From Dimorphilus gyrociliatus (lineage: Eukaryota; Animalia; Annelida): a stretch of 64,000 bases of DNA. Below the pieces are notes generated by a model. The model did not search any database. It was not told where the DNA came from and was given only the letters and a program-made list of their open reading frames with translations. A program made the position numbers and the translations under genes. How positions within the stretch are numbered: position 1 is the first letter of the stretch; every line of letters starts with the position of its first letter. Of the stretch, positions 18,655-27,100 are shown in pieces. Location of the stretch: assembly GCA_904063045.1 (NCBI GenBank), contig CAJFCJ010000014.1:1299643-1363642 (forward strand). Reading direction: 5' to 3'.

Positions 18655-21300
18655 ATATATATTTGGTATATGAATATCGATAGATGATTTCATATATTAC
18701 ACACATACATGCACATACAGCACTATAAATATATATATATATATATAAGCACGAAATATATAAATATTTATTTCTAAATGTATTACTTTGTCGCAGCTTG
18801 CTAGCGTCTGCGTATACTCCAGAAGCGCACACAATCATCGGTTGTGCTAAAGTCGCCTGCAATGATTTCTATGGTTACGCTCTAGACGCGTCGCCTTGCG
18901 GTCGGGTTCATGAAAATAAAGTAAAAAACAGAAGAAAATTACATCATTTTCTTATTGTATTCGTATATATAAACAATTTTAATGAAAGTATTGGTTTAAT
19001 AATTTTCCAGTAGGAAATTTCTTCAATAATTTCGTGTTTCAATGCAGTCTACTAATTTATTTCTCGGTATTCTCTTCGGCTAATTATCCTTCGTCCGTTA
19101 CCTCTTTAATCAAGAATAGTAAAAAGAGTAGGGTAGCCTAGTTAGAAAATTGGAAAGCTTATCAAAAGAGAAGGAATCCTTACAAAAAAGAATATTCGCT
19201 AGTTATCAATTTTGACGTGAGGTTTTTTTTATTATAGAAATTGTTATTAAAAAATGTCGACATTTCTAACAGAATTATTGTGAAAAGAATCGACTCGTTC
19301 ATAAAAAAAAGAGGAAAAATGTTCAATGGAGACTAAACATCCTCTTGCAAAACAAACAGTGAAGAGAGTGAATTATTTTTTAAGTATAATATGTGATTTC
19401 ATTTCTCTCTTTTTTTTTTTGCACTCATGACAAATGTAATCTTTACCTGCTCTTAAAGAATCAGAATAATGTATTTTAAGAGAGATAAGAATATTCGTTT
19501 AACGACAGGCGAGCAAACAACTACAGAAGAAAAAAGAATAGGAAAACAGAGAAAAGAGAGTGTCTACCTAACGAGTAATGTCAATGAACTAATCGATTGG
19601 TTTATAATGTATAGGTGATCTACCCTTTAAAAGTTTTTAAAGTAATGGCCAGTTCATTAACAGAAACATTATAAATTTTACAATTCCTGATGGAATATAG
19701 TTTTAATGACGTAAAAGAACATTTGTACTCCATGTAGAATTCTAGATATTACGTTACGTGAATTTCGATTTTGGAAGGTGTTGAGCTATTCTGTTCGAAA
19801 TACTAAACGCATAACCGCCTCTATTAGAGAGAAACACTTATATATACATATGCAATATCAAATATTAAAATATAAAGGCATATTTATACAAACAGTATAT
19901 ATATTATATATTAGCATATATAGTATATTGTGTATATATTACTGTAGACGCTATTCCCCTTAATGAGAAAATTTTTAGATAAAAAAAAAAGTAGTTATTG
20001 TTCTTTGTAAATAGAGACTGTATATTATAAAAGATAGAAGAAAAAAGTAGGAAAAAATAAACCATCCGCCGCCATTTTAGTTTCAATTAGTCTGGAGAAA
20101 ATAGGTTGTCTATTCATCAGTTCGCTAAAGTGGTCAATCAGTTAAATCAGTATTGTTTTTTTATTCCATCGAAGAAAAAAAGTGATTTATAGATCTTTAT
20201 TTGATTTTTCTTACTTGTAATTAAGGGTAAAAATGATATTTTTGTTCTTAAGTAAATTACATAGATGTTAAATAAATGACAGTTTTAGAATATGAAGACG
20301 ACAAGTAATTTGCTTTTCTATATAATGCTCAGAGCGCTCTCTTCGATTGTAGCAGTACATTCTTTTAGGTCAAGGTCAATGAACCTGCTTATAGTATGAG
20401 TAAACGCTGACAGAGTGAAATATCTCTTATTGTTTATTAACCTTTCTTAACATTCACTCTTTATAAAAAGCAATGACAATCTAAAGAAGAAAGAAGGAAG
20501 GTATTTATATCGTAAAATATATCTGATTTTCCATTTTTTAAAAAACATGCTTATTGTTTGTCTTGTACATAAAAATGAAATATAAGAACAGTAATACTAA
20601 TAATGAAAACTGTCTATTAGGGATTTTATTATTTGTTTCCATTTGAGCTGTGTATATTGAATTATTACACTGACCTAAATATCGTTTTGTTACAATAGAG
20701 ACAGAGGGGAAAATTTAGTACCATATAAGATGTAAGACCTCCCCCTCCCTTTATTGTCTGCATTGTTACTTCTACCTTCCTCGTTTGGACTCATAATGAT
20801 AATTTCGACGAAAGCCACTCCCTAACGGGTTCAAGTTGTAATATATATATATATATATACTGTATATATAATAGATATTTATATTATAAAATAGATGATA
20901 TAAAAACACAAAAGACTAGATAAAGGAAGAATATTTTTTTCTAATACTTTCTTCTTTCTCTTTATCTTCTTTTGTCTATATTTCAAATCTGTGTATTTTC
21001 TTTTGCTTTTATCTTTTTATATCAACAAACGTAAACATACTACTATTCATTTTAAAAATGATTTTAGCACCTGTATAAGTAACTTTATGTATGTAAAAAA
21101 AAAAGTATATGAAAGTTGATTAATATACTCAAAATGAAAGATCGTTAGTATTATTCTTTCAAGTTTCTTTCAATTATACACTTATATACACATATATACG
21201 ATACACACTGATATAAACAACACTTCTTTCTATCAATTTTTTCTATCTATTTTTTCTCTTCCCCCTCCATCCATTCCCCCTTTCTCACACTCACACTCAC

Positions 21301-21355
21301 TCTCTCTCTCTCTCTGCTCCTTCCCTCCTTCCTTCCTTCCTTCCTTCCTTCCTTT
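21301..21355. repeat. Compound (CT)n/(CCTT)n microsatellite
   Basis: Direct reading of the sequence. Confidence 0.9.
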
Positions 21356-21440
21356 CTTACTCATTCTTTCCAGTATCAGTTAATGGAACAAAAAAAGAAA
21401 CGTGTAATAATAATCAAAACCTGAATAACAGTATAGCAGT

Positions 21441-24168
21441 TTATCGGCTTCTTTGAACGGCAGTGATAGTGGCTTTTACGGCATCCTCTACATTATTAAA
21501 TAAAGATCCGCCTTTAGTAATCTCTTCTAAGTAGGTTCTGGCTCTGTTGTAATCTTTCTTGGCTGTTTCGCTTAGAATCTCATTATTAATACGGTCTCTC
21601 TCTATTCTCATTACACACAATATAACTTTACAACCGAGACCATAATAGTAGGCTGCTTCCAGCATTGAGGAAATACCTCTAGAATCATCGGTAATGACGT
21701 AAAGGAGGACACGGCATCTATCCTTAAGAGCCGCCTCTCTGGCAATATAGCGTGTGGTCCACTTATTCAAATAGGGATTATAATATGTTAATCCATTATC
21801 TTCAAATATCGGTACAGCAATCTTTTCTCTCCAATTGGAATTAGCGCAAGTACCACCCAAGTAAACATCGTAAGATTCACAGTAATAATTAGATAATTGA
21901 TAGGCCTTTCCAAAGATCAAATTATAAAAGTATCGGCTAAATGATTTTACTTTTTCCCAGGCGTCTCTGGTAAAGCTAACATTTTGATGATAATGAAACT
22001 CGGCAAGAAGACAATAAAATTCCTCAAGGCTATATTCTTCCATATTAAGTTTATTTTCAAATTCATATAACCATGCAGGTAAATCACGAGAAGTTAACTG
22101 TTTAAAAGCTTTTCTCATAACGTCTTTATTTAATTTTCCTTTTCCCTTCTCATCAAAAGTATCGAATACTTCCTTGACAATTCTAGTTTAAGAAGAAATA
22201 GCATTTAAATATATACAATATATATATATAAAACCTAATCTTTATTGAATAATTTAAAGGGAATGAATAATCTTACTTGAATTTTTGCCCTATTCGTACA
22301 TGTGGGCATTTCACAGGTATAGCACCATCGGCAGTTGATAAGTCTTCAATATTGATATTTTCATATAAGACTCTTTTAAGACATTCCAAAGCTGTTGGTA
22401 AATCATTAAAAACTGGTAATCCTTTTCTTTCTACCAAATGAATAAGGAAGGCCTGACTGCGACAAAGGTCATCGTATTCCCTAAAAGTAGAATAAGGTTA
22501 AATGGAGAAAGGACGGGAAGCATATATGATGGTTTATAACGAGAATACATATTTGTATATATAGCAATCATTATAACTATATATGCAAAATATAACTATA
22601 CTTACGTAGAAGATAGTTTTTCCCCAGCTACTAATTGCTCTGGTCCTTCAAAGGCTTTAACGACTAGAATAAGTGGTCTTCCCCTAGCAGCTAAATTAGC
22701 TGCTTCGACCATGGACGCAGTTGACCTTGTTGTATTTTCAATAACGAATAGAAGTATATCCGCATTTTCTTTTGCCTCATTTTCTATTTCGACTAGGGAT
22801 TCGTTCCAATCGTCTCTTTGCTATTTAGTATGATGATGCAACATAAACATTAGTATATTTATTAAAGAATCTTCCGGTTTAAATAAAAGATTGTCGAGTT
22901 TACTTACGGGATTGTAATAAGTAATTTTATTCTTTTCTAGGTATGGTAAAGCAATATCGGCTCTCCACTGTTTAAATAAAAGTATATACAATAGATATTA
23001 TTCGAATCGTAGAAATGAAGAAAGAGACAGAGAGAAGCAGAGAGAGAAAGAGAGGGAGAGAGGGAGAGAGGGAGAGAGGGAGAGTGTGTGTGTGTGTATG
23101 TGAAAATATAAATGTTTCTTACCGTTGTTGGATTACAGGAACCGCCGAGAAAGACTAATAAAAAAGAATAATTAATTAATTAAATTTAATTAACATTTTA
23201 AATTAAATTACAAAAATAATAATAAATATCTATAACATATATATGGAAAAATATACGGGTAAAGTGAGATATATGGTGGGGGTGGGTGTAGGGAGGAGAG
23301 TATTGTTTGCTATTACATATACCTATACAATACACAGTATATACACAGTATATATATATATATATTTATATATTTTTATATACTCTATATATACTGTGTT
23401 GAAGGGGTGGGTGGGATATTGTAGGCGGTTATAGGAGAAACATAAAATATATACACAGTAAAAAAGTTTTTATGGTGTATATAGGATAAAAACAAAAAAT
23501 GGGAGAGGGGGTGGGGGGAGAGAGAGTGAGTGAGTGCGAGTACAAAATTTTGGATACTAAAATGGCGGTTTTTCTTGTTTATACTAGATTGTGGAGTAGT
23601 AAAAATTGGGAGCAATATATAGGTTATAAGCATGCCCTTGACATTTTTACCTCTTCGTAGATTAGGAGATTGGGCTATAATTTTCCGTCTTAATGTTATA
23701 TACGATAATATTAAACAAACAACTGAACCTAGAAAAGCGAAAATGACGTAATATTTAAAGACATTGCTTATAGGTTATGTTATAAATAGAAAAGTGTTAA
23801 GCTCACCATTGAAAGACCTTGAGGAAGCTGTATGGAATATATAAACAAAATGATTAGTCATCGATGAAAATGTTTATTTATTTTTTTTAAAAAAAAAGAA
23901 AAGAAATTAGTAAAGTTGTTCCATACTCACATTTAACAGCACATTCTCCGGTTTTTTCCGAGAGAAGAGATAAAGGCCTGCTCGGAAGAGATCTGTTACG
24001 AAAAAGAAAAGGAAAACGTTATTTATTGTAACAAGAATACTACGATCTTTTTTTAGTATATACATATAATTAACAGTTTCGTTATTATGTAAACAATATT
24101 TGTATATACTTTATATATACTGCATTTACGTATAAAACTACTCACGAATTTCTATATTCTTTCTTCAT
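21441..24168 (-). CDS. raw: Raw/OLRN-1-like protein: two nucleoside 2-deoxyribosyltransferase-like domains flanking a degenerate EF-hand pair
   Basis: Nine exons from ATG 24168 (MKKEYRNSSLPSRP) splice in phase. Domain 1: VFLGGSCNPTT|WRADIALPYLEKNKITYYNP|QRDDW...LLFVIENTTRSTASMVEAA. Domain 2: VYLGGTCANSNWREKIAVPIFEDNGLTYYNPY...LLYVITDDSRGISSMLEAA. These match my recollection of the Raw repeat. Confidence 0.82.
23051..23096. repeat. (AGAGGGAG)n followed by (GT)n in a raw intron
   Basis: About four 8-nt units, then a GT run. Confidence 0.9.
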
Positions 24169-27100
24169 CTCCGCTACAATAAGACAAAATTCACCAAAAT
24201 TAACTTTATTATCGTCTTTCCTATTGGCAACTGCGCAGGCTTCGTGAACGGCATCTGAGACTGTTTATTTGTTTGTTAATATCATTTTTATTATTATTAA
24301 ACACTGATGACAAACCTTGCGATCTAGAAGGATAAATATTGAAAAAGTGTAAACTCTTTCGAACTTCTTCGTCGGTATGATAATTCTTATCGGTACTATT
24401 TTGCTTGAATACGTACCATAACGTTCTAAAATATATGAAAACACGATTATAGTTTACATAGAAAATATGCGGTTTTGTTGTAATAACTATTAATATTCGA
24501 CCGCCTACATTTAGATCTAGTTGTTACAACAGCGGTATATAAATATATACAGTAAATGCACATGTACTCCCTCAACAGTTTTTAATATTGGTTTGATTAA
24601 ACAATAAGATTTACTCACATTTACTCACATATCACGTGTTAATTTATAATCATACTAAAATATGAAATTATTAATAATAAACATTACGAAATCTCATTTT
24701 ATCCTCTCAGTCCTTTATTGTATAAAAAGAAAAAAAGGCCTAATCTGCTTTCACTAAACAATTTCTCATTCAAGGAGTTGATTGTTAAAAAAAAAGGAAT
24801 AATGAAAAAATTCAAACTAAACTGCCAGTGAAAGATCATTTAAACATTTGTTTACGTGACGGTTATGCAAATAGTATTAGGTGGATTTTTTATATTTATT
24901 CTATTCTTTACAAAATTGTTAAAGGAGGAAGATTATTAGGTAATAAAGAAGACTTGAATGAATTGAAAAGTAGGTTTGTTCAATCAATTATTCAGCAGTT
25001 TGAATTAATGAAAACAAATCATAGTAATAAGGATTTCGCAATCGCAATGATACACTATATAGGCTATATATGTGTTTATATATATATATATAGTATGATA
25101 TATGATATAAAATATAGTTATCATCGATTGTACAATCACACTAGCCACTATCACGAATTTTTACAAATAAAGAAATAACGTGAGTTCTATTACATATCGT
25201 TGGTTTGATAATTTCTCAAATCTATTATTAACTTCCATATATATATATATATATATATAATTATATGTATATTATATGTATATTTAATTTAGGCTCTCTT
25301 AATATTATATAATATTAGTTCATATTAAAAACTTCATACCTGAATGGTAACATTATATTTGTTGTTCACCTTACGGAGGTTGGTTGCTTTCTGTCTTCAA
25401 TCGAAAATGTCTTATAAGTCATCGACTGAATCACTTTTTAAAAATGCAAAATCTTGTTCTTTTGCATTAACTTTTTAATTTTTATAAAGAAAAATTTGTT
25501 TTGTTTTTTTTTTTAAAAAAAAAATATTCAAAAAACTTTTTCCTTTATAAATTTCTGACCGACCAACAACCAAATAGATTGTGAATTTCACTTTCGCGCG
25601 TAAGTAAAAAGTTAGCCACCAGGATCGCTGTATCGTGACGTAAATTTCTAAAAATAGAACTGACATCAACATGTGATTAATCAGAGTTTTGCTACAATCA
25701 AGAGCAATTAGTAAAACTACTGCCTTGCGTCTCTGCACAATAAGCGATATCAGCAAAGATCTGAATTGAATATTCAACGAGAACTTTTGAATATCAGCAA
25801 TATTTATTGCAGTACCCTGGACATGGGATGTAGGCTTAAATCTGTCAAATCAGCGGTTTTTCGGCTTACACGAATAAAAGAATAAGCTGAATATTGAACT
25901 TTTCTCAAACTCTACGTAATTACAAAGACAAATTTTGAATAGGACTAGTTTCCTAAGCGCAAAAGGCAATAATCAGGTTAAAGCAGAACAGTATGATGAA
26001 TTTGGAGGTTGAATTAGGGGGCGGTAGGTGTGAAATGACACATACAAGACAGACTAGGAGCCAATAAAATGAGATGAAAGATAGAATAAGTGTGAAAATG
26101 ATAATGAAAGAAGGACAACTAAAGCAAGGTTAAAATATAAGAAAAAACTACTTTTACTGGTACAAACTAGTATCATTTTTAAATGGTTATAACGAACTTG
26201 TTAAACAGCACTTCAAAGTAGAGTTTAAGGTCATATTGACAAAATAATCGTAAGCAAAATTCTCTTCGTTGTTGATTTACAACGTTTAGCTAGACTTTTG
26301 AAATAAGGACATATTGTTTAGTTAGACTTTATATTTATTACATTAACACTCTTCGTACTCTTTGATTAAAACCAGAAAAAGTAGAGTAAAACGGAGATGG
26401 AAATATACGTACAGTTACATATACAGTATATATTTATATAGACATATAGATAGGAAAGATGGAAGGGAGGAGATAGAGAGAGAGAGAGAGAGAAAGAGAA
26501 AAAAAGAAACGACAAGAATACAGATAAATATATAAAAGGAATACTTATATAAATTTATAATTACAACTTAATTAGCGTTTTAATTAATTATGAAAAAAAA
26601 GGCGAAATATACATGAAAGAATGATTATAATAAGATGTTTGTTTTAGCTAATTTTCCATTGGAGCTTTGATTGATACAATATACTTTGTAGACAATGCCT
26701 TGAAGTTTTCTATACGCATAAAAAAACTGACTTTTTACATATTCTACCCTTTTATTCGTTGTTTGGAAATTTTCTCTTCTATTTATCAATTTAATATATA
26801 TGATATAAGATAAATAAAACATATTATCATGTATCCTCCCTCCCTGCCTTCCTCCTTCTCCCACACACACACACACACACACTCTCTCTCTCCTCTATTT
26901 TTAGTCTCAAATGTTTTTTACATTTTTCAATGTCCAAATTATCTATCTTAATCCCGCCCATCTTTTATTCTTTAAGTCGTTCGGTACACTAGACAATTCT
27001 GTGAGCATTTTTCTTTTTTCTCCACTCTGCTTGTTAGCTCCATTTTAGTGAGGATAAAAAGGAAATATATATATATATATATATATATAAGAGAGAGAGA

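What the first reader, a model, noticed from the sequence alone, without database searches (positions are those of the whole stretch)
21441..24168. Raw/OLRN-1 homologue looks like a tandem nucleoside-deoxyribosyltransferase-fold enzyme, a candidate nucleotide-signalling component
Both repeats keep the FLGG/YLGG strand, W, YYNP and a helix with an invariant Glu (STASMVEAA; GISSMLEAA), placed like the catalytic Glu of NDT/DNPH1-type N-glycosidases. Between them is an EF-hand-shaped pair (VFDTFDEKGKGKLNKDVMRKAF...YSLEEFYCLL) whose first loop lacks the acidic ligands at positions 3, 5 and 12, so it probably does not bind Ca2+. A short hydrophobic stretch followed by basic residues (SVVCLILSYITLRRK) precedes domain 1. 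Established: Drosophila Raw restrains JNK signalling and affects axon degeneration; C. elegans OLRN-1 affects learning and p38 immunity; I know of no biochemical activity assigned to either. Inference: Raw may cleave or sense a nucleotide metabolite, analogous to TIR/NDT-fold enzymes in immune signalling.
Basis: partly seen in the sequence, partly recalled or inferred. Interest (0 to 1): 0.72.

Follow-up and report, generated by a model that had tools for sequence, protein, structure and literature searches.

The report
Worm Raw gene: cADPR hydrolase orthologue

Summary
A minus-strand gene of at least ten GT-AG exons (24425..21441) encodes EF-like domain, NDT/TIR-like domain, EF-hand pair, NDT/TIR-like domain. 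Both catalytic-type domains pass Pfam PF15891 (E 3.6e-16 and 1.9e-10), and a protein named Raw (Bactrocera) is a clear homologue (E 2.5e-34).

PMC13455253 (Cell Commun Signal, 4 June 2026) shows that Drosophila Raw and C. elegans OLRN-1 are cADPR-specific hydrolases. One composite pocket is formed by two Glu of domain 1 (E396, E422) and a D/R/Y/D helix of domain 2. The window keeps both Glu and F/C of domain 1, and D, R, Y plus a D-to-E change in domain 2.

- The Glu of the second repeat is not invariant (30 of 69 homologues; lost in insects).
- A second invariant Glu in repeat 1 was missed.
- The hydrophobic stretch is 12 residues, lineage-specific and not a conserved membrane anchor.
- The gene starts upstream of 24168.

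What remains open: this lineage, like sponges, placozoans and choanoflagellates, keeps a Glu pair in domain 2 as well, so a second site is possible. The linker domains are EF-hand pairs, which the paper does not mention.

The parts
24316..24425 (-). Exon e0: first half of the N-terminal EF-like domain (DD1), ..TLWYVFKQNSTDKNYHTDEEVRKSLHFFNIYPSRSQ. An upstream ATG exon was not located.
   Evidence: AG/GT borders and fitting phase. Conserved with L001 and L002. Aligns to the DD1 region of the homologues.
24146..24260 (-). Exon e1: second half of DD1, ..NRKDDNKVNFGEFCLIVAEMKKEYRN (EF-hand-like exiting helix).
   Evidence: 86% DNA identity to L001, no gaps, substitutions 5/2/9 by codon position. 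The FGEFC motif is shared with homologues.
23931..23992 (-). Exon e2: polar linker (SLPSRPLSLLSEKTGECAVK).
   Evidence: AG/GT borders and phase. Gap-free against L001, substitutions 0/3/10.
23807..23827 (-). Exon e3: 21-nt micro-exon of the linker (SSRSFN).
   Evidence: Gap-free and 86% identical to L001 between gappy introns. There is no RNA evidence.
23651..23728 (-). Exon e4: linker with the 12-residue hydrophobic stretch SVVCLILSYITL followed by RRK.
   Evidence: L001 has SISCLLFSYLTLRRK. The stretch is absent from the linkers of homologues in other phyla. It is too short for a membrane helix.
23123..23154 (-). Exon e5: strand 1 of domain 1 (TIR1/NDT-like 1), FLGGSCNPTT. F at 23152-23150 corresponds to fly F354 and C at 23137-23135 to fly C359.
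   Evidence: F is 72/72 and C 71/72 in the homologues.
22908..22967 (-). Exon e6: WRADIALPYLEKNKITYYNP (helix A and strand 2 of domain 1).
   Evidence: W, R and P are 72/72 and N 70/72.
22606..22820 (-). Exon e7: catalytic core of domain 1. Glu at 22784-22782 corresponds to fly E396. Glu at 22706-22704 (in STASMVEAA) corresponds to fly E422.
   Evidence: Pfam PF15891 E 1.9e-10. These Glu are 71/71 and 71/72 in the homologues. The spacing from F matches the fly numbering exactly. 97% identical to L001 at protein level.
22277..22480 (-). Exon e8: C-terminal helices of domain 1 (EYDDLCRSQAFLIHLVERKGLPVF..) and the linker to DD2.
21441..22182 (-). Exon e9: EF-hand pair DD2 (residues 1-69; degenerate loop DEKGKGKLNKDV at 22154-22119; Ala at 22109-22107 corresponds to fly A532), then domain 2 (TIR2/NDT-like 2) and the stop codon. 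Helix D-YN-R-A-R-T-Y-LE-E at 21554-21522 corresponds to fly D946, R949, Y953 and D956 (here Glu). The Glu pair of domain 2 is at 21737-21735 and 21659-21657.
   Evidence: Pfam PF15891 E 3.6e-16. AF2 pLDDT 87.9. Fold matches. Column counts. Coordinates checked.

Best explanation
The locus is the orthologue of Drosophila Raw / C. elegans OLRN-1 in a lophotrochozoan. An earlier scan note names the genome as the annelid Dimorphilus gyrociliatus; I did not verify that. The protein is an internal duplication of [EF-hand-like pair + NDT/TIR-like Rossmann-type domain]. By homology with the characterised fly and worm enzymes it most likely hydrolyses the N-glycosidic bond of cyclic ADP-ribose to give ADP-ribose. 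It would do so in a composite pocket at the interface of the two catalytic-type domains. Domain 1 supplies the two Glu (e7 residues 13 and 39, equivalent to fly E396 and E422) together with the FLGGSC loop. A C-terminal helix of domain 2 supplies Asp, Arg and Tyr plus an acidic residue (equivalent to fly D946, R949, Y953 and D956). It would thereby remove the cADPR made by the SARM1/TIR-1 orthologue and restrain ASK1/JNK-p38 signalling. What is shown here: gene structure, purifying selection, domain families, fold, and conservation of every published catalytic residue. What is inferred: the activity and substrate in this species, and the domain packing.
For: Pfam PF15891 is found twice, above the cut-off. 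There are 1253 homologues, 77 of them at E<=1e-30, mostly two-domain proteins of 450-650 aa, one of them named Raw. In an alignment of 73 full-length homologues, with the window's exons added as separate fragments, F, C, E and E of domain 1 are 72/72, 71/72, 71/71 and 71/72, and all are present in the window. In domain 2, D is 68/68, R 67/69 and Y 67/68, all present; the last position is D in 56 and E in 8, and the window has E. The spacing F-5-C-37-E-26-E equals the fly numbering 354/359/396/422. Ala at e9 residue 25 aligns with Bactrocera A555, which corresponds to fly A532 by the offset of 23. The published biochemistry is: Km 20-47 nM for cADPR, no NAD hydrolysis, E396 and E422 mutants dead, both domains required, and OLRN-1 active. 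Third-position-biased divergence from L001 shows that the gene is under purifying selection. The gene tree places it among protostome sequences next to molluscs, sister to the arthropod Raw clade.
Against: There is no RNA evidence for this gene, the first exon is missing, and exons e2 to e4 rest on comparison with one relative only. The window's domain 1 could not be folded because the exons were not joined. The last pocket residue is Glu rather than Asp. No activity has been measured outside fly and nematode, and this branch is long (0.99 substitutions per site). All the enzymology rests on a single paper.
Confidence: 0.8

Rival explanations
1. Two-site enzyme. Besides the published pocket, this protein has a second, mirror-image pocket, formed by the Glu pair of domain 2 (e9 E149, E175) and the C-terminal helix of domain 1 (D..R...F). 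It would then resemble an NDT homodimer, which has two composite sites. The second site might act on cADPR or on another nucleotide such as a cADPR isomer.
For: The two domains are clear duplicates (E 1.8e-58). The window keeps both Glu in domain 2. So do 22 of 73 homologues, including Ptychodera, Antedon, Trichoplax, Oscarella, two choanoflagellates and Cyanophora. Insects (Bactrocera Raw: N, L), a mite and crustaceans (E, M) have lost them. Arg plus Tyr/Phe in the domain 1 helix accompanies the domain 2 Glu pair in 15 of 22 homologues, against 2 of 46 without the pair.
Against: With phylogenetic control the association is not significant: 5 independent pairs, sign test p about 0.5. The window's domain 1 helix is imperfect (D, R, F, H instead of D, R, Y, D). 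Domain packing could not be examined, because the tools return no coordinates. In OLRN-1, deleting the second Raw repeat left most function intact (PMC2213652).
Confidence: 0.25
2. Classical NDT/DNPH1-type enzyme: it cleaves or transfers the base of deoxynucleosides or (d)NMPs rather than acting on a cyclic NAD-derived messenger.
For: The best structural matches are NDT-like proteins: 4mcj Z 12.3, Leishmania NDT 10.7, MilB 10.6, RCL/DNPH1 9.2. Pfam files the domain as 'nucleoside 2-deoxyribosyltransferase like'.
Against: The classical NDT model PF05014 scores only 14.9 bits against a cut-off of 28.8. No solved structure is found by sequence. The orthologues tested are highly specific for cADPR and reject NAD, cGDPR and cIDPR. 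All of their pocket residues are kept here.
Confidence: 0.05
3. Non-catalytic sensor or scaffold: the protein binds a nucleotide or partner proteins and regulates JNK/p38 signalling without cleaving anything.
For: For decades Raw and OLRN-1 were known only genetically. The EF-hand-like domains are called dimerisation domains in the paper.
Against: Both catalytic Glu and the whole pocket are under near-absolute conservation (70 of 73 homologues have E,E). The fly point mutants lose activity and phenotype together.
Confidence: 0.07

Closest known systems
Drosophila Raw / C. elegans OLRN-1 (Raw-TIR family cADPR hydrolases; Chen et al., Cell Commun Signal 2026, PMC13455253)
   Same: The DD1-TIR1-DD2-TIR2 order is the same. 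F, C, E and E of domain 1 and D, R and Y of domain 2 are identical, and the Ala that is mutated in raw(dcp-1) is kept. The sequences are clearly homologous.
   Different: The protein is much shorter (about 545+ aa from e0, against roughly 1000 in flies) and lacks the disordered inserts. The last pocket residue is Glu, not Asp. Domain 2 keeps a Glu pair that fly Raw has lost. There is a lineage-specific 12-residue hydrophobic stretch before domain 1. The bipartite hydrophobic region of OLRN-1 is absent.
Pfam PF15891 (Nuc_deoxyri_tr2) proteins, and the putative NDT BDI_0649 (PDB 4mcj) and YtoQ (8of6), which are the top fold matches
   Same: Both domains pass the PF15891 cut-off. 4mcj and YtoQ give the best fold matches, Z 12.3 and 11.8 over 122 residues.
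   Different: The bacterial proteins are single-domain and of unknown or different function. There is no tandem duplication and no EF-hand pairs. Sequence identity is 16-20%. Whether 4mcj or YtoQ belongs to PF15891 was not tested.
Nucleoside 2'-deoxyribosyltransferases, DNPH1/RCL and MilB
   Same: Same fold (Z 9-11). From background knowledge, not a residue-level test here, the acidic nucleophile sits on the helix after the third strand, where the Glu of STASMVEAA sits.
   Different: PF05014 scores below its cut-off. The substrate of the characterised orthologues is cADPR, not deoxynucleosides or dNMPs.
TIR-domain NAD(+)-cleaving enzymes (SARM1/TIR-1, plant L6/RUN1/RPS4, AbTir)
   Same: Foldseek's top hits are plant TIRs (E 1.9e-4), and VIA gives Z 8.5-10.3. 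They share a catalytic Glu and NAD-derived chemistry, and there is a functional partnership with SARM1.
   Different: No Pfam TIR model matches, even at E<=1. The orthologues do not cleave NAD. The active site is built from two tandem domains of one chain rather than from oligomerised TIRs.
Calmodulin-type EF-hand pair
   Same: DD2 (e9 residues 1-69) superposes on calmodulin at Z 8.3, rmsd 1.7 A over 62 residues, with helix-loop-strand-helix twice. In 14 of 51 homologues DD2 matches EF-hand_7, down to E 2.7e-15.
   Different: The window's loops (DEKGKGKLNKDV; NKLNMEEYSLEE) lack the ligands at positions 3, 5 and 12. Its own Pfam score (19.8 bits) is below the cut-off of 30.

Membership tests
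Raw/OLRN-1 family (Raw-TIR cADPR hydrolases) | Four-domain order DD1 - TIR1 - DD2 - TIR2 | tested here: met
   Exon-by-exon: e0-e1 are EF-like, e5-e8 are PF15891, the start of e9 is an EF-hand pair and the rest of e9 is PF15891. The N-terminal exon is missing.
Raw/OLRN-1 family (Raw-TIR cADPR hydrolases) | Conserved set of domain 1: Phe354, Cys359, Glu396, Glu422 (fly numbering) | tested here: met
   All four are present with identical spacing. Family counts are 72/72, 71/72, 71/71 and 71/72.
Raw/OLRN-1 family (Raw-TIR cADPR hydrolases) | Conserved set of domain 2: Asp946, Arg949, Tyr953, Asp956 | tested here: met
   D, R and Y are identical. The last position is Glu, as in 8 of 69 homologues (D in 56).
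Raw/OLRN-1 family (Raw-TIR cADPR hydrolases) | Significant sequence similarity to a protein named Raw | tested here: met
   P0067, 'Raw' of Bactrocera latifrons, E 2.5e-34 with e9 alone.
Raw/OLRN-1 family (Raw-TIR cADPR hydrolases) | Hydrolyses cADPR to ADPR and does not hydrolyse NAD | not testable with these tools
   This needs recombinant protein. It has been shown only for fly Raw and worm OLRN-1.
Raw/OLRN-1 family (Raw-TIR cADPR hydrolases) | Co-occurrence with a SARM1/dSarm orthologue in the same genome | not tested
   Only this 64-kb window was available. No SARM1-like gene was looked for.
Pfam PF15891 Nuc_deoxyri_tr2 | Score above the curated cut-off (30 bits) | tested here: met
   59.8 bits (e9) and 41.4 bits (e7). 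47 of 51 homologue segments also match.
Classical nucleoside 2'-deoxyribosyltransferase (Pfam PF05014) / DNPH1 | Score above the curated cut-off (28.8 bits) | tested here: not met
   14.9 bits, E 0.031, on e7 only. Only the fold is similar (Z 9-11).
TIR domain (sequence families) | Match to a Pfam TIR model | tested here: not met
   No TIR family is listed at E<=1 for any exon. Fold similarity is present. The 2026 paper classes it as a separate TIR family on profile and structure grounds.
Ca2+-binding EF-hand | Canonical 12-residue loop: D at position 1, D/N/S at 3, D/N/S/T at 5, G at 6, hydrophobic at 8, E/D at 12 | tested here: not met
   The window's loops are DEKGKGKLNKDV and NKLNMEEYSLEE. 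9 of 50 homologues do have a canonical first loop.

The most novel reading that the evidence does not exclude
Ancestrally Raw was a pseudo-symmetric two-site enzyme, and this worm's protein still is one. Domain 2 keeps its own Glu pair, and the domain 1 helix keeps Asp, Arg and an aromatic residue. Together these would form a second pocket that the experimentally studied fly enzyme has lost. In addition, the so-called dimerisation domains are EF-hand pairs that still have canonical Ca2+ loops in some lineages. That could couple hydrolysis of a Ca2+-mobilising messenger to Ca2+ itself and would bear on the paper's open question of how Raw is regulated.
Probability: 0.2. Interest if true: 0.55.

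Novelty: already known. Interest (0 to 1): 0.3.

Why it matters
This locus adds an ordinary orthologue. It shows that the complete catalytic set is kept in a compact, fast-evolving lophotrochozoan genome. It also gives a short, insert-free version of the enzyme (about 545 residues from e0) that might be easier to express or crystallise than the roughly 1000-residue fly protein.

Two leads come out of the comparison and do not appear in the paper's main text (I did not open its supplementary files):
- A retained Glu pair in domain 2 of non-arthropod members.
- The EF-hand nature of both linker domains.

Tried and rejected
- **RNA support for the splice model:** no RNA run holds the locus and there is a single DNA holder.
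- **Sequence search of solved structures:** with e9 and with a profile of domain 1, only chance-level hits came back.
- **Word-index protein search with e9:** it found only four exon-sized fragments because of the length filter. I therefore used the one exhaustive search.
- **Synteny between the window and the related loci outside the gene:** none.
- **Search for the ATG exon** through the family's [IV]FG..T motif, up to 4 kb upstream: no convincing candidate.
- **Literature linking Raw or OLRN-1 with deoxyribosyltransferase, or naming PF15891:** nothing.
- **Co-variation between the domain 2 Glu pair and the domain 1 helix:** striking in raw counts but not significant on independent pairs, so it stays a lead.
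- **Membrane-anchor reading of SVVCLILSYITL:** rejected. It is 12 residues long and absent from homologues in other phyla.
- **Residue-level superposition of the Glu on NDT E98 or the SARM1 Glu:** not possible, because the fold tools give ranges only.
Full report
**Observation.** The window is AT-rich eukaryotic DNA. On the minus strand between 24425 and 21441 I find ten open segments. Each is bounded by AG and GT, and their phases fit one another: 1636 nt from e0 to the last codon, in frame. The exons are e0 24425-24316, e1 24260-24146, e2 23992-23931, e3 23827-23807, e4 23728-23651, e5 23154-23123, e6 22967-22908, e7 22820-22606, e8 22480-22277 and e9 22182-21444, with the stop at 21443-21441.

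A related contig from a public run (L001, about 80% identical) supports the model. Exons e1 to e8 align without a single gap at 72-91% identity, and substitutions are concentrated at third codon positions (e7 4/0/25, e8 4/3/26, e2 0/3/10). Most introns are gappy at 55-68%. No RNA run holds the locus. The real first exon was not found.

**What it is.** Pfam places both halves in PF15891, 'nucleoside 2-deoxyribosyltransferase like' (e9 59.8 bits, E 3.6e-16; e7 41.4 bits, E 1.9e-10; cut-off 30). The classical NDT model PF05014 stays below its cut-off, and no TIR model matches.

An exhaustive phmmer search with e9 found 1253 relatives, 77 of them at E<=1e-30. Most are 450-650 aa proteins hit twice. 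Named members include 'Raw' of the fruit fly Bactrocera latifrons (E 2.5e-34). There are also uncharacterised or 'EF-hand domain-containing' proteins of a hemichordate, a crinoid, a bivalve, a cephalopod, crustaceans, insects, a mite, sponges, Trichoplax, choanoflagellates, an oomycete and Cyanophora. One beetle member is auto-named 'nucleoside 2-deoxyribosyltransferase like protein', so the NDT link is already in databases.

In a tree of the DD2 plus domain 2 segment, the window and L001 sit with two unnamed sequences next to molluscs and sister to the arthropod clade. That fits an orthologue in a lophotrochozoan.

**Already known.** A paper of 4 June 2026 (PMC13455253) shows the following:
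- Drosophila Raw consists of DD1-TIR1-DD2-TIR2.
- It hydrolyses cADPR to ADPR with Km 20-47 nM and does not touch NAD, cGDPR or cIDPR.
- It needs both TIR domains.
- It is killed by mutation of E396 or E422 (TIR1) and by the axon-degeneration alleles R949C and Y953N (TIR2) and A532D.
- C. elegans OLRN-1 has the same activity.

It is the only paper on the point that I could find.

**Mapping onto the window.** I aligned 73 full-length homologues and added the window's exons as separate fragments.
- In domain 1 the window has F, C, Glu (22784-22782) and Glu (22706-22704). Their spacing is identical to fly 354/359/396/422. The columns are 72/72, 71/72, 71/71 and 71/72 conserved.
- In domain 2 the helix D-YN-R-A-R-T-Y-LE-E (21554-21522) gives D (68/68), R (67/69) and Y (67/68). 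At the fourth position the window has Glu where most have Asp (56 D, 8 E).
- Ala at 22109-22107 aligns with Bactrocera A555, which is fly A532 by the constant offset of 23.

Every published functional residue is therefore kept, so the most likely function is cADPR hydrolysis in a composite pocket between the two domains.

**Fold.** AlphaFold2 on e9 with 51 aligned homologue segments gave pLDDT 87.9. Domain 2 is a five-stranded alpha/beta domain. An exhaustive structural comparison ranks the matches as follows:
- A putative NDT, 4mcj: Z 12.3, rmsd 3.3 A over 122 residues.
- YtoQ: Z 11.8.
- Leishmania NDT: Z 10.7.
- MilB: Z 10.6.
- The RPS4 TIR: Z 10.3.
- RCL/DNPH1: Z 9.2.
- SARM1 TIR: Z 8.5.

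Foldseek puts plant TIRs first, at weak E-values (1.9e-4), with a cyanobacterial NDT close behind. The two domains of the family are unmistakable duplicates (hhalign E 1.8e-58; BLASTP of e7 against e9 1e-7).

**Linker domains.** Residues 1-69 of e9 fold as helix-loop-strand-helix twice and superpose on calmodulin (Z 8.3, rmsd 1.7 A over 62 residues). In 14 of 51 homologues this segment matches Pfam EF-hand_7, down to E 2.7e-15. Nine of 50 have a canonical first loop. DD1 (e0 and e1) ends in the same ..FGEFC..E.. helix. The paper calls these 'dimerization domains', never mentions EF-hands in its main text, and states that the regulation of Raw is unknown.

1. The Glu of repeat 2 (GISSMLEAA) is not invariant. 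It is E in 30 of 69 homologues, L in 19 and M in 9.
2. The second catalytic Glu (VEIENE in e7) was missed.
3. The hydrophobic stretch is 12 residues long. It is conserved only in the close relative (SISCLLFSYLTL) and absent from the polar linkers of other phyla. The hydrophobic region of OLRN-1 lies elsewhere and is dispensable.

**Residual lead.** The window keeps both Glu equivalents in domain 2 (21737-21735 and 21659-21657). So do 22 of 73 homologues, mostly early-branching animals, deuterostome invertebrates and protists. Insects (Bactrocera Raw: N and L), a mite, crustaceans and a cephalopod have lost them. The pair co-occurs with Arg plus Tyr/Phe in the matching helix of domain 1 (15 of 22 against 2 of 46). 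On phylogenetically independent pairs, however, this is not significant. A second, mirror-image site is thus possible but unproven.

The window's own domain 1 and the full-length protein were therefore neither searched nor folded as a whole.

Noticed in passing
L001 (whole) and L003:3007-5805: The same public run (SRR23372229) holds two Raw-like genes, one about 80% identical to the window's (L001) and one about 44% identical (L003, the same as L002 and L004). They are either two species in one sample or two paralogues. The second type is more compact: FLGG..YNP lies in a single exon, and there is an extra intron after SMLE.
   Followed up: partly
window 24440-24523 (minus strand): An open stretch upstream of exon e0 (QLDLNVGGRILIVITTKPH..) is still alignable with L001 and gives a 40% tblastn match to L002. 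It has no ATG and does not fit the family's N-terminal motif. It could be an alternative or mis-bounded exon, or a conserved intron end.
   Followed up: partly
window 23020-23100 and 21233-21364: There are (CA)n and (CT)n microsatellites inside intron 5. A GA-rich repeat just 3' of the stop gives spurious KEGRKEGR open frames. Both are low-complexity DNA, not coding.
   Followed up: no
P0006, P0088, P0028, P0046 (homologues, not in the window): Two-domain Raw-like proteins also occur outside animals: in the glaucophyte Cyanophora paradoxa, an oomycete and choanoflagellates. The Salpingoeca protein carries an extra N-terminal region that UniRef names ECSIT N-terminal domain.
   Followed up: no
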